Part shown: positions 31,001 to 54,235 of the stretch, one piece after another
Numbering within the stretch: position 1 is the first letter of the stretch
Layout: every line of letters begins with the position of its first letter
NCBI GenBank assembly: GCA_012026655.1
Contig: JAAILG010001123.1
Span: 1 to 64,000 of the forward strand
From: Hydrolagus affinis
Lineage: Eukaryota
Direction: 5' to 3'
Length of the DNA stretch: 64,000 bases
Notes under the pieces: model-generated
What the model saw: the letters and a program-made list of their open reading frames with translations, nothing else
The model's database searches: none
What the model was told of the DNA's origin: nothing
Translations under genes and position numbers: made by a program

Positions 31001-32666
31001 TGTCCTTCATCTCCAGCTCGGCCCCTTTCTGCAGACCAAAAGGGAGAGACATGGTGTCAATCACATGCCGAGCTCAGTTCTTTGTATCCACTTGTCATCA
31101 GAATAAACAGCAGACCAGTCAGGTCCGGCAGGCAAAATTTAATCCAGCCGCAACATTCAGAATGACGTCTAACCCAGGTATATACTGCAGCTCCACTGCC
31201 CCCCAGCACCACCGGACTATACACATGTTCCTGATTTGACAGGGCCCAACCCCACCCCGGTCATTCACCAAACACAGCATCTGCTAACATACCAGGATTT
31301 ACATGGGACTATACAGCATGGAAACAGGCCATTCAATCCAACTCGTCATGCTAGCGTTTAAACTCCACATGAACTCCACATGAGTCTTACTCCACATGTG
31401 TAACTCCACCCACGCCTTAGTCTCCTACGTTCTTCTATCCCTTCTCTCTCATGGTGAATGCCGTAAGAAAGTCATGATGTTTTGGTCCAAAAGTTGCAGA
31501 TAGTTTGTTATTATTATATTAATATTATTAAAGTTGCTTAAAGCAATTTTATTACAGCCTCACTCATTTACATATCTCTCTCCCTTAAATGCATCTACAT
31601 TATCTGCTTTAACCAACGCTTTGAGCATCAAGCTCACATTCTCACTCCTGTTTGCATAATAATAATAATCCTTGCATTTGATATAGTACTTTTCATGTCT
31701 TCCAGACATCTCAAAGTGCTTCACAGAATATACCGTGAAGGGAATTGACTGTATATTGTGGGTGAAATATAAACATGAATATAAATATGTAAATGAAGAA
31801 GTTCCACCTCAATTCTCATTTAGATTTAGATCCCTGAATTGTTTATCATAAATGTTTCCTCTGATTACAGACTTGCCGATAATCCTGTTATAGATGGCCT
31901 TGCAACAATCTGTGTCCAATGTCACTCTTGATCCATTCGATCTGTCTACAAGGACCCAGCTGGTCTCTGGCAGCACATGTGGAGACGGGGAAACACTGAA
32001 ATCCACCACATGGATAACAACAACAACAAAATGACATGCCTTTTTCAGCACGTCCCAGAGTGCTGAAGAGTCAGGGGTCAGGACTCGAGTGGTGGGGGGG
32101 GGGGGGTTCAGGGTTGGATTCCAGGAAAGCAGGACCTAACAGGATGGCGCCAACTCACCTGTAGCAGGAAGTACGCAATACTCTCGTTGCCACAGCTCGC
32201 TGCCAACATCAGAGAGCTCTGCCCTTTATCCGTCACCTGGTTGACGTCCACACCTGCCTCTAGCAGCAGATCCACTATGGTGTCATGGCCTATGTAGGAA
32301 GCATACATCAGAGGGGTCCAGCCACCACGGTTCTTCCTGTTCAGATTCACGGTCCCTCTAATGTGGGAGAGAGTAAAGAGACAATCTTTTGCAGTCTGGC
32401 TGCAAGCATGAAGGGGCAATGCCCAGACCATCCCCTCCCCACACATCCATCCCCCACCCACCCATCTCTCTTTGTGTCGCCGCAAATGTCTCTTACCTTC
32501 TGACGCACCCCTTCACTACCTCGTACTGGCCCAGGGAGGACGCGGTGTGCAGATCCAGTGGCACCTCCAGTTCCTCGCTGCTGATGAGCTGTTCAAAGCC
32601 GTGCCACATGGACAAGCTGCGATTGAACAGCTCCGTCTCACTCGCCTCATCGCTCAGCTCAGACAT
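25052..32666 (-). CDS. ANKS3: Ankyrin repeat and SAM domain-containing protein 3 (14 coding exons, ~638 aa)
   Basis: Minus-strand exons: 32666-32497 (MSELSDEASETELFNRSLSMWHG...), 32357-32159 (GWTPLMYASYIGHD ankyrin), 31028-30907, 30743-30662, 30276-30141, 29948-29775, 29570-29445 (GC donor), 28832-28714, 28004-27837, 27425-27301 (SAM: DLAEFLEQIGCQKYLSVFEEQDVDLRVFLTLTEADL), 26749-26608 (LFGPKRKM), 26172-26000, 25586-25492, 25137-25052 (TAA). Total 1917 nt, in frame. The N-terminus closely resembles human ANKS3 as recalled. Confidence 0.96.
26890..27272 (+). mobile_element. L2-type LINE ORF2 3' fragment
   Basis: Encodes RIEFKILVLTFKAIHSLAPSYLSNLL and FKAGLKTLL, characteristic of L2 ORF2. Confidence 0.85.
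28275..28490 (+). mobile_element. SINE 3' portion
   Basis: Family core and (TTA)n tail. Confidence 0.8.
28867..29200 (-). mobile_element. Full-length tRNA-derived SINE
   Basis: Reverse complement with A and B boxes (ggattcgaac; ccactgagctacaggagctcc). Confidence 0.9.
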
Positions 32667-33959: not shown

Positions 33960-34180
33960 GCCTGGGGTCGGGGTGTCTGGGGTCGGGGGGTCGGGGTGTC
34001 TGGGGTCGGGGAGCCGGGGGGCGGGGAGCCTGGGGTCGGGGTGTCTGGGGGCGGGGTGTCTGGGGTCGGGGGGTCGGGGTGTCTGGGGGCGGGGAGCCTG
34101 GGGGCGGGGTGTCTGGGGTAGTGGCGTCTGAGGCGTTTGGGGCCGGGGGGGGATCTGGGATCCGAGCCCCGGGGTCTGGG
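33960..34180 (+). repeat. G-rich ~15-bp minisatellite (CTGGGGTCGGGGTGT variants)
   Basis: About a dozen degenerate units rich in GGGG runs; source of the spurious Pro-rich and Gly-rich ORFs at 33691-34215. Confidence 0.85.
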
Positions 34181-34620: not shown

Positions 34621-37600
34621 ATGACCTCAACCAAAGAGGACCATCGAAATGCCACACAAGTAAATGGCAACAGTTCTGAGTTTCCAACGACAATGATCGA
34701 ATCCCTAAATCCTGTGCAACAGAATCTCAAATCACATTGGGATGCAATATATGCAGCGGTTAAGGATGAGATACCCTCCCTAGATTCAGACTCTTCACTG
34801 GTAAGTCAGGGATTGAATACTAATATGTACTGTACCTTATAGAGCTCTTGCACTTCAGAGATGGATTAAGATAGATTGAAATACCATTTCCACTTGTTCG
34901 TTCACAACACCTTTATGCTGAACAGCATTTTTTTGTCGACCCTTTATTACTTCTCTTAAGTGTGATCATGTTATGCAAGCGCATTCTAATGATGAATGTA
35001 AAAGTGGGAACAAAAGTGGTGCTAGTGTTATCAATGGTCATTTTAAAACAAACATTTGAGTGTAATCTGTTTGTTTCCTTTGTGCAGTCTGATGTAGAAG
35101 ATGGTGAAATAGCTATTTTCCAGCGACCTAAGTCAAAGCAAATTTCCTCTTTACCGGACGATCTGATGGATTTATCCTTGGATGATCCAGTTCTTGAGGT
35201 AAAATTCAACTAGCTTAACATACATGGGTATAATCTTATATTGGAATTAACATCCCTCGTGATAGCTTGTGGGCCTTGATTGTTTAATATTGATTAGTAT
35301 TGTTTTATGGTTTAGAATTATTATCAAGTGTTGAGAAATTTGTTGATAAATGCCCCAATCTTTAAAACTTGTTGATTAATGGCTTTATGATGTCTACAGG
35401 AAATGCTGGAATCCGTAAGGTACTCACGAATGGCCCTGGAAGAATGCTGCACCACCGGACAGCCTGATATTTGGGAGAGCATCGGAATTGAGAGTTCCAG
35501 GAACAATAACACCAGTGCTGAGGTCGATAGTCGTCCTGAATCACCGGAACAACTAACAGATTTTAGCACAGATCAGAACAAAAATCTCTTTGAGATAAGA
35601 AGAGAAGGTGAGCAACAAGGAGAAGAGTCTTGTGTCCAACAAGGAAATAAAGCTGGGAGTGACCCATGTTTATCAGAAGCACAATTAGTTACTGGGAATC
35701 GAGAAGAAAGCCAAAGATTCAATGCCAATGGAGATGGAAATGTAGTTTTCTGCCAAACTCTATCCTCAGCATGGCTATCCAGAATTGAATCTCCACCTTT
35801 AACAATTTCAACAGCCTCCATGCAAACTAATACAGCAAGCACTTCTGATACCATCCAGCAAAAGGCAACAACGACTGAAAACAATTCAGCTGCCATGTGC
35901 CTACATGCAAAACTCTCCAATCATAAATCAGCTCCACACAAAGTTGCACTACAAAACTTTAATGCAGTGAACAAGGAACATATATGCACTTCAGATGAGA
36001 AAATGAATGTCAAGATAGATATTTTTAATAAAAAAGCATCTAAGAAGCATCTAATAAGAGGAACAAGTAAAGGAAAGCAGAGTAAAAGACCTCCCATACT
36101 TTCTTTAGAAGTGAGTATTAATCATTTTTCTATTCTGTTAGCATCAAAAGTATTGATTGTTTAAGAGCGCTGATTTAAAAAAAGGTATCTTCAGCTCTCA
36201 CTAAAACTGCACATTTGATCAGTGCAGAATTAAACCTGTGAGGGTTACATACAACTTTTATAATAATAATAATAATCCTTGCATTTGATATAGCGCTTTT
36301 CACATCTTATCGACGTCCCAAAGCACTTCACAGAATATACTGTAAAGTGAATTGACTGTATATTTGTGAGCGAAATGAGGCAGCCAATTGCGCACAGCAG
36401 TGTCCCACAAACAGTCGTAGATTGAAATCACAATTTTTTTTTATTATTGTGGTTTTTTTGGATGGATTATTATTAGGCGTGTGGAGTAAGGAAACTTGCC
36501 CAAGGTTTTGCCTTGACCAGCCTGGATTCGAATACAGTTCTCCCCAGCTTGGTCTCCCCAGCTTGCAAGACAAGTTCTCTAACCACTAAGCTACAGGAGC
36601 TCCACGAGTAGTGCTTTTGAGTAGATGAACAGTAACTTCTTGTCTCTGAAGTGTGGAGCGTTATGGATAGAGGATATTGTCCTTCTCTCTGGACATTGAT
36701 ATCTTCTCCCCAAATTATAATTTTGTTTGTTTTCAAAGTATTGTAGTTATAAGTGGAGGTATATGTCGAGTTTGTTTCAGATACAGAGTGCTGGGTCAAA
36801 TCCAACAAGTTGATAATCTATTGCTATGGACTTTGTTTTACAGTCTATAAGCCAAGTGGACCTGGATAGGATCCTCCAGAGCTTGGAGCAGATGGAAGAC
36901 AACAACGTTAGTGTTTTAGAGGACACTCCTAATAGAAATCCATCCATCTCTGGTAACATTTCTCAAACAGATGGTTATTTAGGATTTAATTATTTTAGTT
37001 CTCTCTCAATTTATCCTTCAATGTAGGCTGCTGACTTCTGTAGTCTTTCAACCAGGCAGTTGAGCTGGTCTGAGTCTGATCTCACTGCAGTTGTCCAATC
37101 AAGAGTGGCAGTCAACACGCTGAAACCATGCCAGCCAGCACATTGGTTTATCTGGAACCTTCACTACAATGTAGCCACCAGAGCTATTCCTTTGATGGCT
37201 TCCTTATTAATATTAGACAACCCATTAGTATGCTATTGAACATGCTCACATCACCTTACCTGTACCTCCCTGAGAAAATGTCTAGCATTATTTGTTTTTA
37301 GTGTAGATAACATAAAGGCTGGCAAACACTGTTTACTAGTGATTTTCCAGTCCCCCACATTGTTATGTAAATTCAAACTCGTAGCTCATACTCCCTGGAA
37401 ACACTTATGGTGAGGTAGTGGTTAGCCCTTTTTTCCCAATTTTAGAAATGTAGGGTTGCTAATTTCCTTGTAGTGCTACAGTACACAGGAGGAACTTGCT
37501 ATCAAAGCTGACTGCAAAATCTCCATTTTAAAACTAATTAATAGTAGTAATTGTTGCAATTGAGTCCATAAATAGCTTTTTAAAGGGAATTGGCTAAATA

Positions 37601-40600
37601 TTTGAAGCAAATTATGACTGGATGTGGGGAAAGACGAGTGGATGTGATTACTTCCAGTAGGAGCGAGCACCAACATATATACACAATGGGCCAAATTGTA
37701 TTGTGAAGCCTTCTTCAAGCGTGTAAACATTCTTGAGCACATTCAGTCAGCAACCACTGAGTATGCAAATACTTCTCCAGTTCCTAGTTATGGAGAACTG
37801 TGCAATAATGGGGCACTGTATCATATAGTCTATTTGCCATTTGTTAAAAAAAAATTGTTTTATTTTAGCAAAGAAAATCCAAATTTTGGGAAATGTTACA
37901 GCATTTCTTACTGTAGTCTTACTGTGCTCTGCAGCATCTTCTTATGCCAAAAGCCAGGAGAAGCTTATGGAACAGCTCACTTTGCTGGCTATCAACCAAT
38001 CTGGAGGAATGCTGAAAGAGCTATCAGCCAGGTCCCTGTGTGATGAACAAGACCAACCCAAGAGGGAAAAGTGCAAAACCAGGTGTGATTGGGGGGGAAA
38101 AATGGGCAATTTCCAAATATTTTGTTCACATTACTGCCATTAAGCTGCTTTTTTATATTGGAGTCTAATGTGCCTTGCTATTGATTTCAAACGAGATTTC
38201 TCAATATGGAATCCAACTGTGAATTCCTTCTGGTAACAAGGTATATTGTGCGGACTCGCAGGAATTCTGCTCCAAAAGTGTGTACACAAGGGTAATTACC
38301 AGGATTCACAATGTATAACTTGTAAATCTTGCCGGTAACTGATCCTCTGGAACTCCGCTCTAACACAATCTCCTTCAGGCATGTTGGAAGCATTTCTGCA
38401 GATCAGATTGTTGCGTATCTGGTTAGCTGCAGGATTCCAGTTTTGATTCCTGCTTTAGACTGTATTGCCTGGTCAGAATCGCAAAGCTACACTTATAAGG
38501 GTCCTTTGTTACATGCCTCAAGTATGTTTCAAAGTTTAATATTGGAATTCAACCTCATTTGGGTTTCGGAGATCAATACAACAATAACCTCTTACTAAGA
38601 TGAAAACAGTCTTGCTGATTGTTTATTTTTATTTCTCAGCAGTTCTGTTTCCTCATTTCATGCCATCAATCCTCAAGAAGGCAAATATACATGGAAGAAA
38701 GCAGAGAAGCAGGCAATGAGAAAAACTTCTCCAATTGTTCAGCTTGATCTGCGGAATTGGAAGTTGGAAAAGACCACGGAATCGCAGACAGACCTCAGGA
38801 ATAGAAGACATAAGCTTGCATGGCCCAATTCAGAAAGGTAGCATGATAAATCACTACGTGCAGCTACTTGTAATGCTTCAGTTACATCTGGCATTTACCG
38901 ATTGCAAGTATTCAATATTGAAAATGCTACTATAGAATAATAATACTTTAAATTGACATAGCACCTTTCACATCAGGAGGACAGCTCAAAGTTCTCCATA
39001 GGATTTGCTGTAATGTGTAGTGGCTGTGTTTTGTAACCAATTGATGGTGAATTCCCAGGTCTGATATTTATTACCATGTCCATTCCTCTTCACAGTTCTA
39101 GTTCTACTGAAGAAGAGGAGGACATGCCACCCCAGAACCAGAATAGAGAGAAGAAAAAAGAGTGTCTGGCGTCAGGGGATAATCACAGGTATCTCTGAGG
39201 GTATCATTTGAATTTGTACTGTTAATCTATTACTGTTTGTACTGTCATTCTAATTCAGACTGTGGAGTTGAATTTATTGTGATTCAATGGGTTCGAAACT
39301 AATTAATTATCTGGATTGTAAATCCAAGCTTACATTTTCTCCCAATTGAGCTGTAGTATCCATGTATACTAAAGTACAACAATTTTATCCAAATTACTCC
39401 ACCAACAATTTACACTCTATACAACAGGGGAAAGGGCCTCACATAGTTGACTGGGATCCTGAGCAGAGGGCGAGCGAAAATATCACAAAATGTGGTTGAT
39501 AAGGCTCTGAAGACAGGCTTCAAAGGTCGGGAGTGAGGAAGGGAGGGAGCAAGTTGGTGGGACTCGAGGATGGATAATGCAGCACACATCAGGCACTGTA
39601 CTGGGGTGTTAATCTGGACTGTGGTTTCACAATTCAAGCTACAGCAGAGACACAACCTTTTTGACCCAGAGATAAGAGAGCTGGCAATTGAGTCAAGGGG
39701 ATACCAGCAAGAGAAGGAGTTGCACCCATTCAGGGAATGCTAACAACTGCATTTAAAGATGGATAACCCATTATTGCCCAGTCATACTGACGGTACAACT
39801 TGTATTATTTGCTGTATTAGGTGGAGTGGCTGTACAGGTAAAAGTATGTTGCTGAGCCAGCTCCGAAAAGCAACTAAGGAACCCCTGGAAGTGGCAGGCA
39901 GGACTGGGTCCAAACATTGTGCTGGAGACACTGGTAGAAATCTTGTGGAAGGAAAACCACTCCAGAGGAAGAGGAGAAAAGCAATGACTGAAACCACGAT
40001 TGTTGATCACAAACAGGGCAACGTGTCTGTGAGGGCGGAGACCAACACAGAGAAAGGTGGTTTGGGAACACTTCATTCTTCCAATGACCAGCAGATCATT
40101 GAACTTAAAAAAATAGTTCTTCTTGAGACAAGGATAAACGGCACCTCAGACACCGCCACTCATAGTGTGCAGCAGAGTAAATCCAGAGTGCTTGAGAGAG
40201 AGCAAACCCCACAAAGGAAAGAAGAGTCCGCAAATAAAAACAGGTACTGGGGAAGTGCATGGCTACATTCATGAGTTGCCCAGTTTTCTAGCTTTATTTG
40301 TAATACTGTACCAATAAATTATAATCCATCAGAAATCAGCATAAGATTGAACACTGCATAAAAATTTTTCTGGATCATTACCAACTCTCCGCCTTACCTT
40401 CTCTCCTTCAACTTTTGCAATATTGAGATTTCTCTGTAGTTTTCAAAGTAAAATGAGATGTACTTATAGGATTCTAAAACGCTTCAATTTAAATTTTAAG
40501 CAGAAGTATCGGTGCTAGTCACAAGGTGCAGCCTAATGAACAACACAGGAGAGAACAATGCAGAAAAGAGCAGCAGAGCCGTCAACGGCTACAAAGACAC

Positions 40601-43600
40601 CTGAGTAACCTGAAGCCACTGAGGTCCGTGTCCGGGAAACAGTTGAGCGCGGAGTCTACACCTCTGCTCTTCAGCACGGTGAGTGGGGATGGCGGGGGCC
40701 GGAGGGGACAGTGGATGGGAGTGAGTGGGCAGGCAGGCAAGGGAATGGTGCGACAGTGTGCAGCAAATGCATACAACAAGTAAAATTAACGAGTAATAAG
40801 TTTCATTATTGTTTCATTTATATTATGGATACCCATTTGATCTCTTTCTAGTAAAACTTCAAAGAACTGAACAGTTTGTGTGCATTCTGTATATTGTAAA
40901 GTGTAACAAATATTTTGTACAGTACTTGATAGATTTTAGTTATAATGTGAGGTAAATTATTTCATTAAGGGAGCAGCCTTCACCCTACATACAAAAATAG
41001 TGTCCTTTGGGAATGATACAACACGGGCACAGTAGAATGGGATGACATGTATCAGGATAGTTTTACTCTGATCTGAATGTTTTAGTCGTTACACAGAGAA
41101 TGAGGAAGGTGATGCAACTTTTCTTTATTCATTTGTGATTATGCTCAGGAGGCATCATACCTGCCTAACATCAGCACCTTACCTCCGAGAGGAAGAGAAG
41201 AAATGCTTTTACTGACAGTCCACCTCTCCAGCTGTGGACAAGTGGTCCCTAGTGGCCAGCAGGTTGGACGTTTGCCAGACAGTGCACTGACTGCTGCCAA
41301 CATTTACAATGCAGTGGTTTCATGGGTCCTTTCCCTGGTGAGTTTCTGATTGAGAGTGAATGATTCAAACATTGTTCTAGCTGCGAGGCGTACTGTTAGT
41401 TAACATACAGTGCATGTAACGTGTGGACAGGTGGTTTTATACCACTGTCATTTCACTAGATTTGTTGCTTTCAACCATTAGGAACAGAATGACTCAAAAT
41501 CCTGTTGTGATTCCTCGCTCGGTTTATTTGGAAACATCTTTGTAGAATGAATTCACTTTCTTTTTGCTCCTTCACATATTCTCATGCATACCAACATCTG
41601 CACTGATGAACGTGTTCAGACATCCTGATATAAGGAAAATTATTAAACTGAACAATTTTTTTCCCAATTTTTTTTTACACTATAATGCAGTTGGCTAGCT
41701 CCAATGTCTCAGGCTACGTTACAAAAAGCTCAAAAAGAATGACTAAGGGTTATCAGCTTGTTGCTGGTATCACTGACTGCTTTTCCCATTAATCTTTACC
41801 TTTCACTTTCCATTGCCAAGTCAGTTTCAATCAAATTTGTTTGTACTTCTGAGAACCTAATACCACTTTAATAAGCCAACTACATATCTGCTGTAGTTAT
41901 AGAGAAAAAATAGCCACTTATCTTGAATTCTCTGAGCTTCAACCTATTCAATCAACTCATCCCTACAGAAACGTAGCGAGTGATTTTGAGAGAGTAACTT
42001 TATGTGTACATTATATTATTGGGACATAGTAGAAGACGCTTTTCTCTGTAGTTGACCCAGGAATGCTTCATAGTGATGCTTTGTGCCTAAAATGGGAATG
42101 TGTTCCTTCACCTTAATAAACACAGAATAGTCTCTTAGCTGAACCTTGGAAACAACATCATATTGTGTTTGAAAAATAATACTGTAAAGTTTATTAAGTT
42201 ACACACCAATACAAGTGCATTGGATTTTTGAAGTAACTCTGTTTTGGTTGACTAGGTGATCGTTCCTACCATTTCTGAGAATGGATCATCTGGAGATTGC
42301 TCTAGAGCTGATGTGGCCACACCATTTCAGGTGGTGGGTCTCCAACAGACCTGGCGTGAAGATGGGCTCGCTCTTTACGTCTGTGTGATACCAGCGTGTG
42401 AGGGTCTTGTTCAGCCTACCTACAGCAAGAACCGAAAGAACAGGGTTAGTGAAATACCATGAAATACTTCAGTGTGTGTGGGTTATTATAATAATATAAT
42501 AATAATCCTTGCATTATATATAGTGCCTTATCACATCATTGAGACTTCTCAAAGGGACTCACAGGATGCACTATAAATTGTGAAGTGCAGTGACTGTATA
42601 TTTTGTGAGTAAAACACGGCAGCCAATTGCGCCTAGTACTGTACCACACGCTGTCATGGATTGACTCTTTTTTTCGATTATCTTCAGGTAAAGGAAGAAC
42701 TAAGAGGCACCTCTGCATTTTACCAGCTGGTTGTGAAATTCCTATCACAAAGTTGTCTGAAACCAGTGATCTGGTGGAGTGAACAGCTGAACAGTTGTCT
42801 TCGGGAACAATCGTGTCCAATGCACGTGTGCCTTCCTTCTGTTCGCCTCAGCTCTGTGATTTCTGTCAGTGCAGACACTAAGGTCAGTCGGTGGATAGAG
42901 TTTGAATATACTGTGGCTAACGTTGATAGAAGGGATTTTTGAAAAGCAAAAACCTTATGGTTTGAAAGCTTTAAAGAATACTTAATAAAGCAATAGGCAT
43001 TGCTTTATAACAAATCAGCATTGTTATTTGGTGTACATACTATTTGATAGCTAAATGGCCATCGTTATAAATAATAATAATCCTTGCATTTGATATAGCA
43101 CCTTATCACATCTTTAAGACGTCTCAAAGCACTTCGCAGAATATATTGTAAAGTGAATTGACTGTATATTTTGTGCGTTTGTGGATTGCAGTGACTATTT
43201 TTTAAAGGAATTGTTACTAAACTATAAATCAATTAAGAATAAGTTTGACTTTATGATTGGGATTTAGTATCATCTTAGTTTTGGGTTCTTACACAGGCCG
43301 TTGAAAAAGTTTTTAAGGTTCAGATTGGGTTTTACTGGCAAACAATGGAGACCGAGGAAAACTACTGCCCCGGTGCTGAGGAGGTTGGGGAGAAATGCAA
43401 GGAGAATCCTGAGGTAGGGCAAGGCAATCATATGCTTTCTGTGGCTAATAATTCAGACATTAATAATGCGATGGGTGAGAGTTGCCCAATGAAGATTTCA
43501 TTAAAGTGCACATATCTCTGTGCTAACATATAATAATAATAATAATCCTTGTATTTGATATAGCGCTTTTCACATCTTATCGACGTCTCAAACTGTTTCA

Positions 43601-46600
43601 TAGAATATACTGTAAAGTGAATTGACTATATATTTGTGGGTGAAACGCAGCAGCCAATTGGCAGAGCAGAGTCGCACAAACAGTCGTGGATTGAAAATGA
43701 CCAATTTTTATTATTATGGTTTTTTTGGACCGATTATTATTAGGCGTGTGGAGTGAAGAAGCTTGCCCAGGTTTCACCCTGATCTGTCTGGATTCAAACA
43801 CAGGTCTCTCACTCGTAACCACCGAGCTACAGGAGCTCCACATAATACTTTCATAGAATAATTCTACTAAAAAGTACCTGATCTACCAATAGCTTAGGAA
43901 GCACAATGGAAATTGGTATTCTTTGATTGATTGAAACATTAATTCTAATATTTCTCTACTCTTAGGTTACCATGGCACTAGTGTTTGAGAACTTGTTCAC
44001 TGATCCCATAGCATTTCACCACATACTGCAGCTCGTCTTAAGCAATGGTATAGATATCTGTGGTCTTCGACTGCTGTATCCAACACATAGCCTCCTGACT
44101 GACAGCACAGGTAAAGGAATTGTATAACCTGTGGTGGTTGTCCATGATAATGTTGAGTATATTTGCAATGGCTGCACATTTATATGTAATAAATTGGGTG
44201 GGAGAGAGAAGAGTTGAACATTTAAAGGCTTATTGAAGTTGTTTGAATGTACTTAAGTGGTATAATGTGTGCTACATTGTTATGACAGCCTGAAGTGTTC
44301 CCACAGAGTCTATTGTATATACAATGAGGTGCCCATTAAAGCTTAATTTCACACAGTAATAATAATCCTTGCATTTGATATAGCGCCTTATCACGTCTTT
44401 GAGATGTCTCTCCTCCCTGTAAATGCATTCTAACCTATCTTTCTCTGTTCTCATTTGGATTTCTGTTTCTTTAGGTAAATTGCCATCTGCTTATTTCTCT
44501 GATGATACAAAAACAATGCCTGTACTGGCATTGGCTCTGAGAGGTGTGAATGCCCGTGCATTGTGGATCGACATTGTAGGACCATCTGACCCTGGGGTAG
44601 CCAGTGTGACAGATCAGCACTCCATAAATGCATTGTACTGCAAATGTCGTAGTGAGACACTTCTCTACTCCCCACGCCAGGAGAGTCGCACCCACTGGGA
44701 GTTGTACGTCTGGTTTGGTGGGAGGGTTCCTGAAGATGGTATTGTGCAAGTCGGCATTCAGAATCCTTTCAGGAGGACCAGGTTCAGATCCAGGTATGTC
44801 CAGGAAGAGTGTGTCTGTCCGTGCAATGAAAACAAACTTAAAACAGGCTTCTATCCCATTCAATTATGAGCAACAGAATCAATCGTAACTTTCGCTGAAT
44901 CAGGAAAGAAGGGGCGTTAACTTTGGGTTTGTCATTTGAGAGGGAAATAAGCAGAAATAGCTTCATTTAGAGGTTATGTTTTCCTACATTAGAAGACAAC
45001 AACAACTTTGATTTATATAGCGCCCTCCACGCCGGACGGCGTCTCAGAGCGCTTCACAATAGCGGATCCGGGACCGAAGACAGAATCCTTTGACCATACA
45101 AACGCTTAAAAATGAATAGGACATGTACTTGATGGTAAATAAAAGGAAGAGAGATTACAGTAAAAGGGATATTATCCACACAAGCTGAGAGCCTTTTAGA
45201 TATGAAAGCAGTGCAAGTCCTAAAATACAAATCGATTACAGTGTTAAACAAGCAATTCTTCCATTAAGAGTTATACTGTTATTGTGCCAGTCTGTGCCAA
45301 AAATCCTGCTGTGAAATGTGCTATAACATGATTATCATTATTATTATTTCATTCTTTACTTTCAGATCTAACAGTCCACAGCCCAAAGGAACCCACACAA
45401 ACTCCAGACAGGATAGGGATGCACAACAGATTATACCTTGCAGACCTCCTGCTACAGTTGTTGCAACTATCAAAGGTAAATGCTCTGCGACTCCCAACAT
45501 GGATAGAAGAAACAGCACAGGGAGGGTTTAATGGAAGGGAGGGAGACATGATAGAATATAGGAAGTTGTCAGAGATGGCCAGCTTGGCGATGTCACAACC
45601 TTGGGTAACGACAAGATCAAGGGGGATTGCATTCTGTGCTTCGTGTTCCATACTTTCCACAGACTCTACAAGTTTCTGCCCTATGCTAGACCTCAAACTA
45701 TCGAACAAATCTAAAAGTTCCAGTTGGAGACACTACCTGAATTGATATAACTGATAAAAGAATGGGACTTGATGGTTTTATTATTGAGCAGAGCTGTCCT
45801 CTCTGATTTAAAGAAATATAGATTAAATTGGGAAAGGTTTAAAAATATTAAAGAACAAGCATCCCATTTGAAATGTGATTCGGAATGCATGGTTTCAGGT
45901 TAAACTAACTTTAGTGTAACTGGTGCTTTCTGTCAGACAATCAACAATCTGAAGGCCATAATCAACAGAATTTCACTATACTGTATAAAGTTATTTTTTC
46001 ACCCATTGTGTTTGTTGCTTTTCTATGTCCTAGCTGACCTACTGCTGCTGGTGTCGCCTGCTGTGCCTCTGAATTGCTGTGGTGATATCCTGTCAGTCTG
46101 CACCAGACGGGGATTCAGTCTGCAAGGTGTACGGCGTTTGCGTCTGACTCCAAAGCGAGCCAGCAGTCTCAGCATCGGGAGTAAGCAGGTAGGAGACTAT
46201 TGGCAATTCACGGTTTTAGTTAGGAGCAAGTTTGCTGTTCGTCTTATCAAATTGTTTTTCAGTGAAAGAGTTTCAGAAATTGTAACATATTGCCATCATA
46301 TAGTACTAGTGGAGGGATGTAAGTAGAGCAATGAAAAGTTACTGCAATCTGTTTTTAACAAGCAGCATTGATGTCAATATATTTCTGTTACACTTGCAGA
46401 TCTCAGTGTTTTGTCAAACAGCCAGCAATGGATCCCTAATGTCACAAGGCTCTGCTGTTGACGAGGTGCCTAGCCACTGTATTTTAATGCTGCTGAGAAA
46501 AGAGAATGTTTCTCACCATGTTCCCAGTTTACTGAAAGGTACCGCATTGAAATGATTAACCAATATGTTTTTTTTTCTTTGTCTCTTTGTGTTGACCTTT

Positions 46601-49600
46601 CTAATTATTGCCTGTGTTTCTACAGTTTCAGTCAGGAAACTTTTCATAATATCTGGGTTTCTATTCTTCTGCAGGATTAATGAATGAACTGTCTGAACAG
46701 GGATTGATTGGAGGTATACAGAGCAGGCTTCACCACAACACTGAAGTTGATATTGGATTGTGTTTTCATGTGGTGCCTTACTCTGACCACATTCTGCAGG
46801 GACTAGGTAAGGACTTTTCAGTAGCCAGGTATATCATAATTTAGCCCTAACGGGGCTAAATTATGGCATCACTAATCTTTCCTATAACTGACCCATCAAA
46901 CGTGATTCTGGACATTTATTGTTATCTTCATATGAATGTTTCCCTTATAAAACTGTATTATTATACATTTGTTCAGCTTTGTGTTCTTCGATTGCTCTGA
47001 GTAATTCCTTTACCCTAATTTGATTGATGGCTGTGGCAGGAGGAAGTCTGAGTGCAGTGGCCGATTCTGCCAGTCTCACACTGGATGTGCTCTATGAGCA
47101 CAGCTACATGTCCAACCCCGAACTGGAGCAAGTTGTTGTTCTCACATTGACTGGGCACAAAACCATGAAAGAAGCGGGGAACTGCCTGCGAGAGCTTCTG
47201 CGTCCTACAGTCAACCAATCACAAGGTCGATCTGGTAAGACCATGTAATTTATATTAAAGGAGGAATAAAACCTAGCATAAAAACTGTTATCAGGGATAA
47301 GAATCTCATCTCCTTATCTTCCAGTGCAGCAAGCTTAATAATTCAATGGGAAAAAATAATTATTTTGTGAACGTTTCACTGATCAGCAAATCATTAACAG
47401 GTAGTCAAACAAATGAAAAAATTACAGTATAGTACAAGGAATTAAAGAGGAGATTCGGAAAACATTTCTTTATACAGAAGATGGTTGGATTGTTGTTGAG
47501 GCTGAGCAGGTAAATTATTTGAAATGGGATTTATGTAGATCTCAAAGGGATAGTGAGTAGGAATGTGGATTTTAATTATTAGGTTACTCGTGTAAAAATT
47601 CTAACGCAGACTTGATTCACTAAATGGTTTGTTTCTACACTGTAACATCAATGATCCTATGGATGTCTGTTGCTAATTTCTGTGCTGATTTCCTCACATA
47701 ACAATATGGCAGATGGAGGTTTTGAACTGCTAGGCTTGAAATGGTTGCCACATCTGAGCAGCAGCCAAGCCAAGGAACTGACCCCATTTGAGGTGGGCGA
47801 CCGGCACTGGCAGGGCAGCATTGACTGCCTAGTATCCAGCCCAGCTCTTGTATGTGTGCTGCGTCGAGTCCACGCCTTTGGTGTGTTGGCTGAATTTCTA
47901 AATACAACTAACTCCAAAGTTAGTCTACTCGATGCAAAGCAAAGTAACCTGGAGAAAATCATGTCACCAACTCCAGAGATAGCTTTCCGACAAGCTGCTT
48001 TATTCTTCACTGACCAGGAACTAGTTTCAGGTATGATGCATACATATTATTTAACACAATTTTTTTAACTCTGAGTGAGGAAGATCTAATCTACGTGGAA
48101 TGCAGTTATAACCTAACAAGAAATAGTTTGCCACTGATCCATTTAGCTGAAAGTTGCATTGTTTTGACAGTTCAATATTTCACCCACAAAATATACAGTC
48201 GATTCACTTTATAGTATATTCTGTGTGGCAGTTTGAGACATCTTGCAGATGTGATAAAGCCCTATATCAAATGCAAGGATTATTATTATTATTATTTCTG
48301 TACACATTTTCTACTGCCCTCAGATCCAAGTGCCCGGCCATTACTAAAGTACATTCCACCCTCTCTCAGCTCGAGGAACACTGCAACAGGTACATGTCAT
48401 CAATTTCTGATTCTGACTATATATCACTATTTGTTTGTATCTTTTAATATAGACTAACAACAGTTGTAAAATCTAATCCGCATGATCTCTAGCGAAGATA
48501 ATGTGGTCCATGATTCTGGTGATGCTGAGAAAAATGCGGGTCGTACTTAAGCACAACTAATGAAGAGAATTATAAAATCTTAGTAGTAAATAGATTGTGT
48601 AGTTACCACCCATGTATTATTTTCACTGTTGCTATTCCAGTTGGTCTATGCAATGTGTTGTAGATATTAACTCACCTTCTGCATATTTCCTCATCGTTCT
48701 TCTGTAGCTGACTCTCATCAGACCTCTTCTTCTTTCAGGGAAAAGATCACAAGCCGTCAACAAAGAGTCGATCTTTACCTACATGTTGCTTGGTAAGGGC
48801 TGGCTACATGTACAGTTGTTCTTCATTTATTTCCCTGTGTCAGCTCTTTCCCAACGTTGTCTTTCTCCTTGAGTCACAAATTCTAATTTTCTTTCCTCTT
48901 CGGACTTTTTCACAATCCTCTGCCATCATTCCCTCTTTTGTTTCTCTTCTCCCTCTAATATGTCTTATTTTTATTTATTATTATTATTATTATTCTTGTG
49001 TCCATGTCACCCCTCGTTACTGTTCTGGTGTTTTATTCCACAATTATTCTATCTCTTCAATGCTGCAATGATTTGAAATTCACTGTTGAAGCTAGGCCCA
49101 TAAATTTCAGGCTTAAATAAACTTCTCATGTATTGAATTGGTTGATGTTGATCAGTGGCTTGAATCCTTTTGCTATTAGTTCTCAAAAGGACCAGAAAAT
49201 TGTTTGTGACACCTACCCAACCATGCTACTGTCTGTTACAGGAGCCCAGCCCTTGTTGACTGTGCTGGTGATCAAACCCTCCACTTTGCCCCAGCATTTC
49301 TCTAAGGTTCTCCGCAAGCTAGACCTGGAGCACTTCTGTATTGTTGGGATGAAAATGGTCAGTCTGGATAAAGAGAAAGCCTCCCTACTGTCTCCATCTA
49401 TCATACAACAGGTATATATGCCAGTGAAGGAATTTGCTTTCTTCAAACAGTATGGGACAACATTAATAATTTGATCACTTAGTCCATGACTTTGGCATCC
49501 AGTGTGTTTCAGCAAAACGCTACCTGCGAGTTCCTGGAGTTACTGGAATCCTGTAGCTCAGTAGTTAGAGCATTCGCCTTACAAGAAAGAGACTTGGGTT

Positions 49601-52600
49601 TGATTCCCAGCAGGGCGAAACCTTGGCAAGTTTCCTTACTCCATAATAATCCCTCAAAAAAAAATTGGTCATTTCAATCCATGACTGTTTGCGGGAGACT
49701 GCTGTGCGCAATTGGCCACAAAACCCTCCTCTTCGACGGTCCCAGCAATCACCCCAAATCCCCCATTTTCCCTCCCTCCCTCCTCCCCATCCCCACCTCA
49801 GGGCTGAAATAATGGCTGTCCAGCTCCTTGGGACGTCCTCCTGACATGAAAGGCATTATACATTTGTAATTTTGTTGTTGTATTCTGTGAAGTACTTTGA
49901 GATGTATAGAAGATGTAAAAAGCTCTATATCAAACAGAAGGATTATTATTATTATTACTCGGTCGGATGCATTTTGATCTTTTAATAACCGCCCCTCATG
50001 CAGGGTCAAACATTGAAATCAAACATCTGTTTTCAGGAAGAGGATTTGATGAGCCGCAGCATTGATTTCCTGACCTCAAGTCCCTCAGCCATTTTGTGTG
50101 TTCAAAGAGAAAATGCTGTAAAAAAGCTGCTCGACTTGCTTGGACCAGAAGATCCCCATGAGGCCAGAGCCCTGAACCAGTTCCTATGGAGAGGTCACTG
50201 TGGGACAGACCTAGTCCATAACGGCTTCTATGGTACGTCATTTAACAGGTTTTCATATAACACGTATATTATAAAATACGGCATTATTCTTATTTTACTA
50301 AATAACTAAATAACCAATTAACTCAGATTGAACTTGTAGATTTAATGATGAACCAACTGGATGCAACAACTCTTTATCCTTTGTTACAAAATATCTATTG
50401 ATCTCCATCTTCTGAAAGACTCTCAATTGACTAGTTTTGGTCTTCTCAAGTCACCTGTTGCATATTCTCACAACACTTTGTGTAATATTTGTTTTCTCGA
50501 TGATTATGTCACTGAATCAAAACTTTATAGGGGTTCATTGCAGACTATCTGAAGCTATATTACTTGTGTTTTAGCGTTCCGGAACACTACCCTGCATGAG
50601 GGGCGGTATATAATGCAAGTTGTGGTTTCTGAAATGTATAGATTTAGAAAAGACTGGACAGCAGAGTAAAAGATCTCTGTAAATTGTGTTTGTCGGTGTC
50701 TGCCATGTCTGGTACAGGGTAACACTGTATACAGCTGTAACTCTGCCTCAATGTTTAATGGTGTGCTCTTATTTCCAGGTTCCCAGTCTTACAAGACTGC
50801 AGTCAGGGATGTGCAGATGTTTTTCCCGGAAGGACTTTGTTGTGAAGAGTTTCAAATGCTCCTGAATGAACAGGTGAAGCACAGATAGATGCACATCAGC
50901 CTGGTTAGGATACTCTTTACCACAACGATGGGTTTCTGCTCATGTCCAATACCTGACTGACCTAAAAGAAAATAGTGTATTGCTCAAAGCTTTAACTTGC
51001 CTTAACCCTGTACATGAAGTATTTCTCTGAACTGTCCTGGCCTTGTGTAGCGGCATTTCCCAGTGTGTTGCCCTGTCTGTACACATTCAGTAATTGAGCT
51101 ATGATTTGGCGCTTTTGCTTCTCATCTTCAGATTCTCACCCACAAAAAGGACTTGCTGATCAGCCCCGAATTCACACACAACCGAAAGCTCGTCAAACGT
51201 TCTTCTCTTGCTGAGTCCCAGGCAGTAACTGTTGCGTGGAGTGCACAGCAAGGTAATCCCACCAAACCTTAGAGAATCCAAATCTGAGTTGATCACCGTT
51301 CACTGAACAAATAAACTGGAGCGCTGTACATTTAGGGGCAATGATGAGATAACCAATTTCTGTATCATGTTTGCATTATCTTAAATTAATATTTTTTGAC
51401 CAAATGTTAATTATTGCTGCATTCAACCAAATTCATCAAAATGAGAGAATCGGAAATCAATCAAGTGCACAGTTTGATTCACAGTGGTACAGCTCCCCAC
51501 AAACACAACAATAAGATTAGGAGCCAATTGATTTGATTTTGAGGATAAATTTGGATTAGGAAGAGAAAGGCTCCTCTTTAATACTGTCATAGGAGGTCAG
51601 ACTCTAATCCTTTACACAGTTGTTATAATAGGAAGGATTGAAAGCCACAGGATTGCCTAGGCTAATGTCACTTTCATGTGGAGCCAGTACAATCTCTAAA
51701 TGGGAGCCCTTAGCAAGTGAGGACAATATAACTGGTCAAATTAAATTCTTGTCTGATTGCACTGATTGCACTTATTGGCACTTTGAACTGTCCTTCCATC
51801 TCCAAGTTTGTTTAAAATCCAACTCAGATAGAAAGGTAATAAAACAAATGACTAATTTTATCTGGGAGACTATTGGCCAGGACACTAGGAGAAACTTCTT
51901 TAATGTCCACCTGAACAGGAATATGGATCTTGATTAAACATCTCATCCAAAGAATGGAAATGCTGCACATCATTAGAACTGGATTTCGGCGCCTTAGGAC
52001 ATCCCGACGTGAAAGGCACCTATACAAATGTACTTTTGTTGTTGTTGGATTTGGAGTGTGAACGATTCACTGTGTGAGTTTAAAGTCCTGATGTGGGGCT
52101 TGTGGGGATATAGAAATCGATTGTACAGACATGAGGAAGGGGGTTCAAAACTTGCTATCTCTATCTCACTGGTGTATGTTGATTACTGCTGTTTGTAAAC
52201 AGTTCAAAAGATATGTGAGCGTGTGTATAAATACATTAATTGTGTGTGTGTGTGTGTGTATAATTTTAAAATAACACATATATGTAAAGTTAAAATATAT
52301 AAAGCATTTCAAATCATTTTCTGAAGCAATTATATTGACCTCTGGCATCTCTGTCCCCTTTTCCTACAGATCAGCTGCTTCCTACTGTACTCTGTCAGAC
52401 GACTTGCTTGTTGCTCCCCAGTCCCTTCATCAGCAGGAGCCACCACCCACCGTACATTGAGGTTATGGACCAGCTGGTGGGAAGCAAGTTTCTACTGATG
52501 GCGGCCCGGATGGGAGTTCTGGACCAGTCCCAAGCTCAGCATATAGCCAAGCTACTCACTACTGAAAACAGCAGCTCAACAATGGTATACACTCACAGGC

Positions 52601-54235
52601 AGACCTGGGGGCACACATAGGGGCTGATCATGCAGTGTAACCATAGGTAGGGTAGGAGAAAGACACAAGTAATCTCACTATTTCATTTGTGTTAGCAAAT
52701 TTCTAAAGTGAAATTTCTTTATTCGGCAAAGAAATTTGAGAAGTTTGAGAGTATCGCATAAGCTTGCTTACTCCACACATACATATAATAATAATCAGTT
52801 AAAAAAAAACTAGAATAAAAATTGGTCATTTTCAATCCACGACTGTTTGTGGGACACTGCTGTGCGAATTTGGCTGCTGCGTTTCACCCACGAATATAGA
52901 GTAAATTCACTTTACAGTATATTCTGTGAAGCGCTTTGAGAAGCCTAGAAGATGTGAAAAGCGCTATATCAAATGCAAAGCATATTATTATTATTAATTA
53001 TTATGGGTCTTCAGGGCACCTCGCTCTTCCAAGACATAATGTCAAGGATGAGAGCCCTACCGCCCAGCCATTGCTTTTTCCTGACTGCGTTAGGGATACA
53101 GGTGTGATGAGTGCTGATCTGTCACTGCCCCCAGTGTGATGCTGTTGTCTTTGGCAGGATAAGAAGGATTAAAAATATACTGTTTGCTTTTTTTGGCAGT
53201 GCTCATTGCTCACAAGTGGTCCCTGTTTGTTTCTGGCTCTGGAGAGAGATAATGCCATATCTTGTTTCAACATACTGTTAAGCAGGTGAGTGCATCCTAA
53301 ACATTCTGGCTGTTATGGATACTGCAATGCGCAGAAATACGGTGTTTAAAATGGAATTGAGGCATGAAACCCCCTTTGTAGTGTGTGCTCATATTTTCCC
53401 TATTATTTTTTGCTTCCTGTGGGATGATTGAAGAGCGTACGCAGTAGATCAACCGATCCCTGAAATGGCAGGAAAAAATCTGAATTTAAATTAGAAATCA
53501 ACTTGTTTACTGCGTAATTACCAAATCAACACTTCCTGTCTGTTTCAGGATTTCCTGGGACAAATTGCAGCTCCAGGAATATCTGCAATATCTCATCTAC
53601 CCAAAGACTGAGAAACAGGCAAGTGATCTGTGCATTCTCCAGCACAGACATCATTAGCAGCATTGGGGGTCCGAATGTCTGGCTGATTTATATTCCTCAT
53701 AAATATGGTCACACATTAACCACCTGATGATGCAGTGCTGGGATGTCAGTCTGGACCATAAAAGAATGTGAAATTTTGTTTATCACAGCAGTTCCCATAA
53801 TCGGTTAGGATGCATTTGGCAGCTCCAGGTTTCTTCATGTGATGCAAACATTTAGAAAACATTCTTGTAGTACAGATTGCTGCCAGCTGGCAAGCACACA
53901 TAAGAGATAAAATGGTGTTAAAGATGACATTAATGCCTAGTTAAGCAAGAAAGTACAGATATGTTTCAGAAGCACTGCATTAGGTACAATGTGAAGGTGA
54001 TAAGATTTTTCATTCCATTGAAAAGTAATGAAACAGATCATCCATTATTCATCATGTGAAGATAGGGTTAGATTGTTGCTTGCTAGCTCTGACTATTGCT
54101 AACTTGCTGTGTTTGTGTTTCTGACAGGCGGAAAAATTACTCTGCTGTCTGTTTGATACTCTGGCTCCTCAGAGCATTCATTGCATCCAGCACCAGGATT
54201 CCATACCTAATGCAGGAGCAGCACTTGTACTGTAA
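34621..54235 (+). CDS. DNAAF8: Dynein axonemal assembly factor 8 (C16orf71/Daap1), long form with C-terminal tandem NDK-like domains (31 coding exons, ~1844 aa)
   Basis: Exons: 34621-34800, 35088-35198, 35400-36110, 36844-36952, 37935-38082, 38640-38837, 39096-39188, 39821-40243, 40501-40678, 41149-41337, 42256-42444, 42688-42882, 43297-43413, 43966-44110, 44475-44793, 45366-45475, 46034-46188, 46400-46538, 46675-46806, 47040-47234, 47713-48030, 48324-48389, 48739-48792, 49242-49411, 50037-50232, 50779-50873, 51132-51252, 52370-52584, 53200-53285, 53549-53618 (GC donor), 54128-54235. Total 5535 nt, all phases compatible. C16orf71-type motifs WDAIYAAVKDEIPSLDSDS, EIAIFQR, DLDRILQSL, QEKLMEQL, CTGKSMLLSQLR. 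Head-to-head with ANKS3 as in human. Confidence 0.88.
36260..36603 (-). mobile_element. Full-length tRNA-derived SINE
   Basis: Same family; contains a small internal duplication (tctccccagcttg x2). Confidence 0.9.
42490..42665 (-). mobile_element. SINE 3' portion ending ~20 nt before a DNAAF8 acceptor
   Basis: Reverse complement of the family tail and core. Confidence 0.75.
43530..43839 (-). mobile_element. Near full-length tRNA-derived SINE
   Basis: Same family, with a small deletion in the tRNA head. Confidence 0.88.
49545..49957 (+). mobile_element. SINE interrupted by an L2 3' fragment (~49722-49880)
   Basis: SINE head and core to ...gcgcaattggcc, then an L2 end with (TTG)n, then the SINE tail resumes at tattctgtgaag. 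Confidence 0.8.
52760..53004 (+). mobile_element. SINE lacking the tRNA head
   Basis: Family core and tail. Confidence 0.8.

What the first reader, a model, noticed from the sequence alone, without database searches (positions are those of the whole stretch)
43966..54235. DNAAF8 carries an array of about five tandem pseudo-NDP-kinase domains
Seen: after the C16orf71-like N-terminus, in-phase exons continue for ~1180 aa, and five segments show NDK-fold sequence patterns. R1 (43966-44793): ILQLVLSNGIDICGLRL...PVLALALRGVNARALWIDIVGPSDP...SINALY...LLYSP. R2 (46034-46806): LLLVSP...GDILSVCTRRGFSLQGVRRLRLT...ILMLLRKENV...CFHVVP. R3 (47040-48030): GFELLGLKW...LVSSPALVCVLRRVHA...IMSPTPEIAFRQAALFF. 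R4 (49242-50873): TVLVIKP...FCIVGMKM...FLTSSPSAILCVQRENAVKKLLDLLGPEDP...NGFYGSQS...DVQMFFP. R5 (52370-54235): LLTSGPCLFLALERDNAI...LIYPKTEKQAEKLL. Known: active NDKs need the phospho-His in NxxHGSD; in the best repeat it is Tyr (NGFYGSQ). Human DNAAF8 lacks this region, and I recall a single NDK domain being described for Xenopus Daap1. Inference: the ancestral protein is a disordered dynein-assembly scaffold fused to a multi-NDK pseudoenzyme array. A single chain might fold as a pseudo-oligomer mimicking an NME ring, or substitute for NME8/NME9-type dynein subunits during assembly.
Basis: partly seen in the sequence, partly recalled or inferred. Interest (0 to 1): 0.82.

Follow-up and report, generated by a model that had tools for sequence, protein, structure and literature searches.

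The report
Five-domain NDK-like array in DNAAF8
This cartilaginous-fish copy of the cilia-motor assembly gene DNAAF8 ends in five tandem, mostly degenerate copies of the nucleoside-diphosphate-kinase domain, a layout found from invertebrates to birds but described in print as a single domain.

Summary
Window 34621-54235 (+) is an intact DNAAF8/DAAP1 gene. It is 64-95% identical per exon to Callorhinchus milii DNAAF8.

- R4 is a Pfam- and PDB-grade NDK. The best solved relative is NME7.
- R1 and R3 exons of the window hit solved NDKs directly.
- An R5-only profile hits NDKs at E 4e-11.
- R2 is the weakest. Its profile matches R4 at E 5e-10, but solved NDKs only below threshold: 22 of 23 hits, best E 0.078.

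The order N1-N2-R1-R2-R3-R4-R5 recurs in 107 of 109 further proteins, Xenopus Daap1 included. It also occurs in invertebrates and in a few microbial-eukaryote transcripts.

At the phospho-His position R4 has Tyr in the window. Among 172 relatives it is Tyr in 139 and His in 25; the named His carriers are all invertebrates.

Print describes only "an NDK domain" (Lee 2020).

My reading is a non-catalytic, outer-dynein-arm-binding scaffold; that part is inferred.

The parts
34621..34776 (+). Exon 1 with the ATG; start of the DAAP1 (DUF4701) region
   Evidence: tblastn P0001 residues 1-52, 87% identity. Pfam DAAP1 E 3.4e-7, 30.1 bits against a cut-off of 27. Start codon located.
35088..40241 (+). 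Seven exons of the poorly conserved DAAP1 part: 35088-35198, 35394-36110, 36838-36954, 37928-38077, 38659-38835, 39121-39192, 39819-40241. Limits are HSP ends.
   Evidence: tblastn P0001 residues 61-655. Pfam DAAP1 covers P0001 38-573. Mean pairwise identity among 29 relatives is 0.19.
40514..43416 (+). Conserved N1/N2 region of unknown family: exons 40514-40678, 41140-41343, 42256-~42444, 42685-42885, 43291-43416
   Evidence: tblastn residues 657-942. Spliced RNA contigs of a related species join these exons. No Pfam family in P0001 or in the four window exons scanned; the 42256 exon was not scanned on its own. Not NDK-like by hhalign. Mean identity 0.31-0.34.
43966..44794 (+). R1, full-length NDK-like domain: exons 43966-44110 and 44475-44794. 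Tyr of the LLYSPR motif (44660-44677) sits at the phospho-His column.
   Evidence: Pfam NDK E 0.0042. phmmer against PDB: 13 of 13 hits are NDK/NME, best E 9.6e-4. hhalign to R4 E 3.6e-15 and 8.9e-21 with larger profiles. RNA contig joins 44108|44473. Splice signals read.
45355..45477 (+). Linker exon between R1 and R2
   Evidence: tblastn residues 1093-1133. Mean identity 0.15. hhalign to R4 P 0.74.
46003..46823 (+). R2, the most degenerate NDK-like domain: exons 46003-46191, 46397-46540, 46674-46823. Ser replaces the strand-1 Lys (VSP).
   Evidence: No Pfam or PDB hit from window exons. hhalign to R4 E 5.1e-10 and 5.6e-9. R2-only profile against PDB: 22 of 23 hits are NDK, in register, best E 0.078. 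Atlas lead 0.87 to NDK clusters.
47039..48029 (+). R3, NDK-like domain with a shortened Kpn-loop region: exons 47039-47245 and 47694-48029. The motif starting GFELLGLKW (47718-47744) lies in the best conserved domain after R4.
   Evidence: Pfam NDK E 0.08. phmmer against PDB: 6 of 8 hits are NDK, best E 0.015. hhalign to R4 E 2.7e-12 and 1.3e-15. 95.5% identical to Callorhinchus. Five columns of this stretch are invariant in 29 relatives.
48735..48794 (+). Small exon between R3 and R4
   Evidence: tblastn residues 1472-1491, 90% identity.
49148..50873 (+). R4, the canonical NDK domain: exons 49148-49411, 50019-50232, 50779-50873. Tyr (tat 50229-50231) replaces the phospho-His.
   Evidence: Pfam NDK E 3.7e-4 and 8.6e-6 on two exons. 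The orthologue scores E 6.8e-25. The whole-protein profile hits NME7 at E 1.7e-44 through this domain. Splice sites read.
51129..51254 (+). Exon between R4 and R5
   Evidence: tblastn residues 1644-1685, 90% identity. Mean identity 0.16.
52390..54235 (+). R5, NDK-like domain and end of the gene: exons 52390-52584, 53200-53283, 53550-53630, 54125-54232, then the stop codon at 54233-54235
   Evidence: tblastn of P0152 residues 1686-1837. Pfam NDK E 0.13 on 53173-53286. hhalign to R4 E 1.5e-17 and 3.9e-41. R5-only profile against PDB: NME7-type chains at E 3.9e-11, and 53 of the 60 rows shown are NDK-type.

Best explanation
The window holds the intact DNAAF8 (DAAP1, C16orf71) gene of a chimaera-like cartilaginous fish. 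One protein of about 1840 residues has three parts.

1. A poorly conserved N-terminal DAAP1 region.
2. A conserved region of about 290 residues (N1/N2) with no known family.
3. Five tandem domains that all descend from the nucleoside diphosphate kinase domain.

Only R4 keeps most of the NDK signature: the strand-1 Lys, and the Arg, Asn and Ser around the active site. In this fish, and in all named vertebrates, its phospho-accepting His is Tyr. R1, R2, R3 and R5 have lost these residues. R3 and R5 have shorter Kpn-loop regions.

Shown: the domains, their order, their homology and their conservation.

Inferred: the array does not transfer phosphate in vertebrates. It serves as a folded binding platform for outer dynein arm parts during cytoplasmic pre-assembly and delivery, while the N-terminal region places the protein in the ODA sub-compartment of DynAPs. 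That placement was shown for Xenopus by Lee 2020. R4 may still bind a nucleotide.
For: Gene and exons.

Transcripts: spliced RNA contigs of a related species join the last DAAP1-region exon to N1 and N2. Separate contigs join N2 to R1 and run on downstream.

NDK nature of each repeat:
- R4:
- R1:
- R3:
- R5:
- R2:

All four degenerate repeats match R4 by profile comparison, while three control segments do not.

Same order of domains: 107 of 109 further proteins, including Xenopus laevis Daap1, P0281.

Constraint: mean pairwise identity is 0.32-0.44 in the repeats, against 0.15-0.27 in linkers and 0.19 in the N-terminus.

R4 columns in 29 relatives: Lys 26, Arg 28, Asn 25, Ser 28, and Tyr 22 against His 7.

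Function, from Lee 2020 (PMC7785291, passages read): Daap1 was found as a novel ODA-interacting protein. It sits only in DynAPs, and the N-terminal domain alone suffices for localisation and retention there. [quoted passage not shown]
Against: - No structure could be predicted, so the fold of R1, R2, R3 and R5 rests on sequence homology alone.
- R2 never reaches significance against real NDKs (best E 0.078; no hit).
- No single RNA contig bridges 42444 to 42687, so no single transcript record shows the gene as one unit in this lineage.
- The N-terminal domain alone localises correctly in Xenopus, and mammals do without the array, so the array may be dispensable for the core function.
- No binding partner of the array is known.
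- The mapping of NDK key residues uses NME1 numbering that I recalled, anchored only on the NME7 alignment printed.
Confidence: 0.72

Rival explanations
1. Only R4 is a true NDK-fold domain. The other four segments are unrelated alpha/beta domains whose weak similarity to NDK is chance or a composition effect.
For: Window exons of R2 give no Pfam or PDB hit. The first R5 exon gives only an unrelated hit at E 1.4. Natural fragments holding only R2 and R3 (P0028, P0031, P0036) give no Pfam NDK hit. One of 160 shuffles outscored the real R2.
Against: Profile comparisons to R4 give E 5e-10 to 1.5e-17, while three controls from the same protein give 0.02-0.7. The result repeats with 124-136 sequences per profile. 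R1 and R3 exons hit solved NDKs. The R5 profile hits them at E 4e-11. R2 profile hits are 22 of 23 NDK, with strand 1 in register. The outlier shuffle aligned only 13 columns.
Confidence: 0.05
2. Two genes are wrongly read as one: a DAAP1 gene ending near 42.4 kb, and a separate multi-NDK gene starting near 42.7 kb.
For: In all three RNA-like runs the contigs stop at 42424-42444 and start again at 42687. No record bridges the gap.
Against: The break falls inside the conserved N2 unit, beside a repeat of very high depth at 42474-42664. Both contig sets have similar depth. Over a hundred gene models from other species carry both halves, as does an MMETSP transcript. Xenopus Daap1 was expressed as a full-length construct, alongside a truncated one holding only the N-terminal domain (Lee 2020).
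Confidence: 0.03
3. The array is still an enzyme or a nucleotide-driven switch. R4 binds and perhaps turns over nucleotides, and the other repeats regulate it.
For: R4 keeps Lys, Arg, Asn and Ser in 25-28 of 29 relatives. His is kept in 25 of 172 sequences; the named ones are echinoderms, hemichordates, a tunicate, molluscs and a nemertean (with names).
Against: His is Tyr in all named vertebrates, Phe in the protist-type sequences and Leu in the acoel. Two further phosphate-contacting positions (recalled) are acidic in most R4 copies: Asp in 23 of 29 and Glu in 18 of 29. No assay exists.
Confidence: 0.15

Closest known systems
Xenopus Daap1 / DNAAF8 (Lee et al. 2020, eLife, PMC7785291)
   Same: Orthologue. 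It has the same N1-N2-R1-R2-R3-R4-R5 layout by my repeat models (P0281) and the DAAP1 N-terminal family.
   Different: [quoted passage not shown] Here there are five NDK-like domains. Relatives occur in invertebrates, and Haliotis proteins carry PF15773 in the precomputed list.
NME7 (DM10 domain plus two NDK domains; axonemal microtubule inner protein)
   Same: Best solved relative of R4: E 1.7e-44, both NME7 domains. Also among the best hits for R1 and R5. A tandem NDK protein of cilia.
   Different: No DM10 domain was found (Pfam on P0001). The window gene has five repeats, not two. Daap1 is not in axonemes (Lee 2020).
NME8/TXNDC3 and NME9/TXNDC6 (thioredoxin plus NDK domains, linked to outer dynein arms)
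   Same: Multi-NDK proteins tied to outer dynein arms. A TXNDC6 chain is among the PDB hits of R4. Lee 2020 report Nme9 among Daap1 interactors.
   Different: No thioredoxin domain. The N-terminus differs and there are more repeats. That NME8 has three NDK domains is recalled, not tested.
Tetrahymena Q22MS1 (Mali et al. 2020 preprint, 10.1101/2020.09.04.282897)
   Same: A 222 kDa cytoplasmic ODA-binding factor with a catalytically inactive NDK domain said to be homologous to that of DAAP1. It is needed for ODA delivery (passages read). Its size is close to the 1700-2060 residues of invertebrate relatives.
   Different: The authors state there is no homology outside the NDK domain and no orthologue. 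I had no access to its sequence, so nothing was tested.

Membership tests
DNAAF8 / DAAP1 (Pfam PF15773) | N-terminal DAAP1 family match above Pfam's cut-off | tested here: met
   Exon 1 alone scores 30.1 bits against a cut-off of 27, E 3.4e-7. The orthologue P0001 scores 97.7 bits.
DNAAF8 / DAAP1 (Pfam PF15773) | End-to-end collinear similarity to proteins named DNAAF8 | tested here: met
   tblastn of Callorhinchus DNAAF8 covers residues 1-1837 in about 30 exons at 64-95% identity.
DNAAF8 / DAAP1 (Pfam PF15773) | Localisation to DynAPs and a role in ODA deployment | not testable with these tools
   Known only from Xenopus and human (Lee 2020).
Nucleoside diphosphate kinase domain (Pfam PF00334) | Family match above the gathering score | tested here: inconclusive
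   Single window exons reach 26.1, 20.8, 17.4, 13.3 and 12.6 bits against a cut-off of 27. The exons were not joined. The orthologue's R4 scores 87.9 bits.
Nucleoside diphosphate kinase domain (Pfam PF00334) | Phospho-accepting His in the NxxHGS motif (motif recalled) | tested here: not met
   Tyr in the window (tat 50229-50231). Tyr in 139 of 172 relatives, His in 25. R1 has Tyr and R3 has Ile at the aligned column.
Nucleoside diphosphate kinase domain (Pfam PF00334) | NDK (ferredoxin-like) fold in each of the five repeats | not testable with these tools
Only sequence homology is available.
Group II NME proteins (NME7, NME8, NME9) | DM10 or thioredoxin domain before the NDK domains (recalled) | tested here: not met
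   Pfam on P0001, P0002, P0005, P0007 and P0019 lists neither.

The most novel reading that the evidence does not exclude
DNAAF8 is the animal orthologue of an ancient eukaryotic ODA-packaging factor whose ciliate form is Tetrahymena Q22MS1. The five-domain NDK-like array would be the part that grips the assembled outer dynein arm in the cytoplasm, and mammals would have lost that grip. A bolder variant: the five domains plus the single NDK domain of an NME9-type partner close into a six-membered, NDK-hexamer-like ring.

In favour:
- Array-bearing relatives occur in microbial-eukaryote transcript sets.
- They begin with an acidic Ser-rich motif like that of animals. This was seen by eye only; the profile match is not significant.
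- Q22MS1 has a like size, an inactive NDK domain and the same phenotype.

Against: the authors report no homology outside one NDK domain. My three searches reached no ciliate.
Probability: 0.3. Interest if true: 0.72.

Novelty: new variant of a known kind. Interest (0 to 1): 0.55.

Why it matters
DNAAF8 is listed among the dynein assembly factors with domains of unknown function and is called largely disordered (J Cell Sci 2025 review, PMC12633730, passages read). That picture comes from the short mammalian form.

The ancestral protein is mostly folded: N1/N2 plus five NDK-derived domains. These are conserved as well as, or better than, anything in the N-terminus.

This gives a concrete target for structure and binding studies of outer-arm pre-assembly in Xenopus, zebrafish or sea urchin. 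It widens the family beyond vertebrates, and it raises the question of what replaced the array in mammals.

Tried and rejected
No fold search was therefore possible.
- The whole-protein profile (A1) against PDB shows only R4, because each NDK chain aligns to its best profile region. It does not test the other repeats.
- I first took NxxH motifs in R1 of gar, Coregonus and P0039 for a kept catalytic His. The hhalign register shows that this is another column, so I dropped the claim.
- N1/N2 as a sixth NDK-like domain: not supported. Best P is 0.008-0.05, over short or border overlaps. Four window exons of N1/N2 have no Pfam family at E up to 0.01.
- N-terminal motif in protist-type sequences: seen by eye, but the profile match is not significant at E 0.098-0.59. 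The acoel protein does match, at E 1.1e-10.
- A Pfam NDK hit in P0140 (E 1.8e-7) lies in a stretch my models label R5, but its place right after R3 fits R4. I do not count it for R5.
- Searches from protist-type queries found 3 and 8 proteins and no ciliate. Q22MS1 stays untested.
- The single-cell RNA run X5 covered only repeats.
- The two Atlas calls are leads only.
- The search of earlier findings gave nothing that bears on this.
- Not in print, as far as these searches go: only Lee 2020 and the 2025 review hold C16orf71 together with NDK. The Lee 2020 passages I read speak of a single NDK domain; the review's one NDK mention concerns Q22MS1, not DNAAF8.
- Figures and supplements were not visible. 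Figure 5D of Lee 2020 could show more domains than the text says.

Full report
**What is there.** The + strand between 34621 and 54235 carries about 30 exons. They are collinear with Callorhinchus milii DNAAF8 (P0001, 1786 aa, and its longer isoform P0152, 1837 aa) at 64-95% identity per exon. The gene starts at an ATG at 34621 and ends at a stop codon at 54233-54235. The window therefore comes from a cartilaginous fish close to, but not identical with, Callorhinchus. The species was not determined. Exon 1 alone matches Pfam DAAP1 above the family's cut-off. Window sequence was searched exon by exon, and whole-protein work used database relatives.

**One gene or two.** I laid contigs of three RNA-like runs of a related species on 39800-45500. 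They are about 88-96% alike in exons.
- Exon bins have depth 12-50. Intron bins have depth about 0-3, except over repeats.
- One set of records joins 39819-40243 | 40515-40677 | 41148-41336 | 42255-42444, with up to 3297 more letters upstream.
- A second set joins 42687-42880 | 43295-43411 | 43964-44108 | 44473-44790, with up to 1216 more letters downstream.
- So the last DAAP1-region exon is spliced to N1/N2, and N2 is spliced to R1.
- No record bridges 42444 to 42687. That gap lies inside the conserved N2 unit, next to a repeat of very high depth.
- Gene models of more than a hundred species, and an MMETSP transcript, carry both halves.

**The five repeats.** Evidence for each repeat follows.

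*R4*
- Pfam NDK on two window exons: E 3.7e-4 and 8.6e-6.
- Pfam NDK in the orthologue: E 6.8e-25.
- A profile of 29 full-length relatives hits solved NME7 chains through this domain at E 1.7e-44.

*R1*
- Pfam NDK: E 0.0042.
- The window exon against all PDB sequences gives 13 hits at E up to 10. All 13 are NDK/NME proteins, best E 9.6e-4.

*R3*
- Pfam NDK: E 0.08 in the window and E 8.4e-4 in fragment P0054.
- 6 of 8 PDB hits are NDKs, best E 0.015.

*R5*
- The window exon gives only Pfam E 0.13. The first R5 exon finds nothing relevant in PDB.
- An R5-only profile of 12 relatives hits NME7-type chains at E 3.9e-11.
- Of the 60 rows shown, 53 are NDK-type. The others are one designed repeat protein, which scores by summing eight weak stretches, and six enoyl-CoA hydratases at E 0.17 or worse.

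*R2*
- This is the weakest repeat. Window exons find nothing in Pfam or PDB. Three natural fragments with only R2 and R3 give no Pfam NDK hit.
- An R2-only profile gives 23 PDB hits at E up to 10. Of these, 22 are NDKs, with strand 1 in register, but the best E is 0.078.

**Homology among the repeats.** I cut profiles from orthologous columns of the 29-sequence alignment, so that no repeat contaminates another.

| Compared with R4 | E | Columns | E with 124-136 unique sequences per profile |
|---|---|---|---|
| R1 | 3.6e-15 | 125 | 8.9e-21 |
| R2 | 5.1e-10 | 85 | 5.6e-9 |
| R3 | 2.7e-12 | 109 | 1.3e-15 |
| R5 | 1.5e-17 | 123 | 3.9e-41 |
| N1 (control) | 0.05 | | not significant |
| N2 (control) | 0.024 | | not significant |
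| linker (control) | 0.74 | | not done |

Sixty column shuffles per repeat score a mean of 13-15 with a maximum near 21, against observed scores of 64-107. The exception is one R2 shuffle at 131 over 13 columns. A further 100 R2 shuffles peaked at 24.5. An iterative search from R4 alone also gave five hits at matching places in each of the seven proteins I printed.

**State of the active site.** In the alignments to R4, the phospho-His column holds:
- Tyr in R4 of the window (tat 50229-50231);
- Tyr in R1 (in the LLYSPR motif);
- Ile in R3;
- Ile or Leu in R5.

Counts in 29 relatives:
- R4 keeps the strand-1 Lys in 26, the Arg in 28, the Asn in 25 and the Ser in 28.
- R4 has Tyr in 22 and His in 7 at the catalytic column.
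- The strand-1 Lys column is Ser in R2 (28 of 29) and Gly in R3 (26 of 29). It is mixed in R1.

Over 172 sequences of 900 aa or more with an R4 match (isoforms included), the catalytic column is Tyr in 139, His in 25, Phe in 5, Leu in 1 and a gap in 2. The named His carriers are crinoids, starfish, sea urchins, a sea cucumber, two hemichordates, a tunicate, bivalves, a gastropod and a nemertean. No named vertebrate has His. Other invertebrates (Saccoglossus, Haliotis, Lottia and others) have Tyr. The residue roles are recalled from NME1, anchored only on the NME7 alignment printed.

**Spread and conservation.**
- The single-exon search found 153 proteins at E up to 0.001. The best 150 were listed, and I aligned the 29 of these that are 1400 aa or longer.
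- A second search with the crinoid array found 184 proteins. The 120 listed come from echinoderms, hemichordates, an annelid, a brachiopod, a nemertean, molluscs, sharks and rays, coelacanth, lungfish, amphibians, birds, reptiles and ray-finned fishes.
- Of the 109 newly fetched proteins, 107 show N1-N2-R1-R2-R3-R4-R5 in that order, Xenopus laevis Daap1 included.
- An acoel relative and several microbial-eukaryote transcripts have the array too.
- Mean pairwise identity among the 29 relatives is 0.39, 0.39, 0.41, 0.44 and 0.32 for R1 to R5. It is 0.34 and 0.31 for N1 and N2, 0.15-0.27 for linkers and 0.19 for the N-terminal 650 residues.

**Function.** From Lee 2020 (passages read):
- Daap1 was found as a novel ODA-interacting protein, and Nme9 is among its interactors.
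- It is confined to DynAPs.
- The N-terminal domain alone localises and is retained like the full protein.

From this, and from the loss of catalytic residues, I infer that the array is a non-catalytic binding platform for outer-arm parts. I also infer that R4 may still hold a nucleotide. Neither point is shown. The ring idea could not be tested, because structure prediction was off.

**What is known.** Print describes 'an NDK domain' in non-mammalian Daap1 and calls DUF4701 vertebrate-specific (Lee 2020). The 2025 review calls DNAAF8 largely disordered. Mali 2020 link the Daap1 NDK domain to Tetrahymena Q22MS1, but deny any further homology. My four literature searches found no description of several NDK domains. 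Figures, supplements and automatic domain databases were out of reach, so prior cataloguing cannot be excluded.

**Verdict.** This is a known gene with an undescribed five-domain architecture and a wider range than stated in print. It is of moderate interest.

Noticed in passing
window 40514-43416 (+): N1/N2 is a conserved region of about 290 residues between the disordered part and R1. It is present in 107 of 109 relatives. No Pfam family was found in P0001 or in four window exons of the region, and it shows no detectable likeness to the NDK repeats. Its fold and role are unknown.
   Followed up: partly
window 47694-48029 (+): The main R3 exon is the best conserved exon against Callorhinchus, at 95.5% identity. 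It carries a motif starting GFELLGLKW, followed by a QAKE..TPFEVGD stretch, with several columns invariant across 29 animals. This could be a binding surface.
   Followed up: partly
window 42474-42664, 43047-43237, 43429-43810, 44193-44574, 44957-45147: Intronic copies of a very abundant short repeat, in both orientations, with summed contig depth up to about 3.8e5 in RNA-like runs. They account for the recurrent 'KCKDYYY'-type open frames, and probably for the contig break at 42.4-42.7 kb.
   Followed up: partly
window 33962-34130: A G-rich tandem repeat: period 15, about 12 copies, runs of four G. It lies about 500 bases upstream of the first coding exon, between DNAAF8 and an ankyrin-repeat gene on the other strand.
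   Followed up: no
window 32111-32512 (-): An exon with ankyrin repeats (Pfam Ank E 5.9e-14), head to head with DNAAF8. From memory, ANKS3 neighbours C16orf71 in human; this was not tested.
   Followed up: partly
window 13071-13382 (+) and 62587-62919 (+): A WD40-repeat exon (E 1e-7), coronin-like by eye, and a weak PDZ exon (E 0.0015). They belong to neighbouring genes.
   Followed up: partly
P0187 and P0195 (microbial-eukaryote transcripts), first 40 residues: Both begin with an acidic Ser-rich stretch ending in VF[EQ]R, like the animal N-terminal motif. The similarity is seen by eye only; the profile match is not significant.
   Followed up: partly
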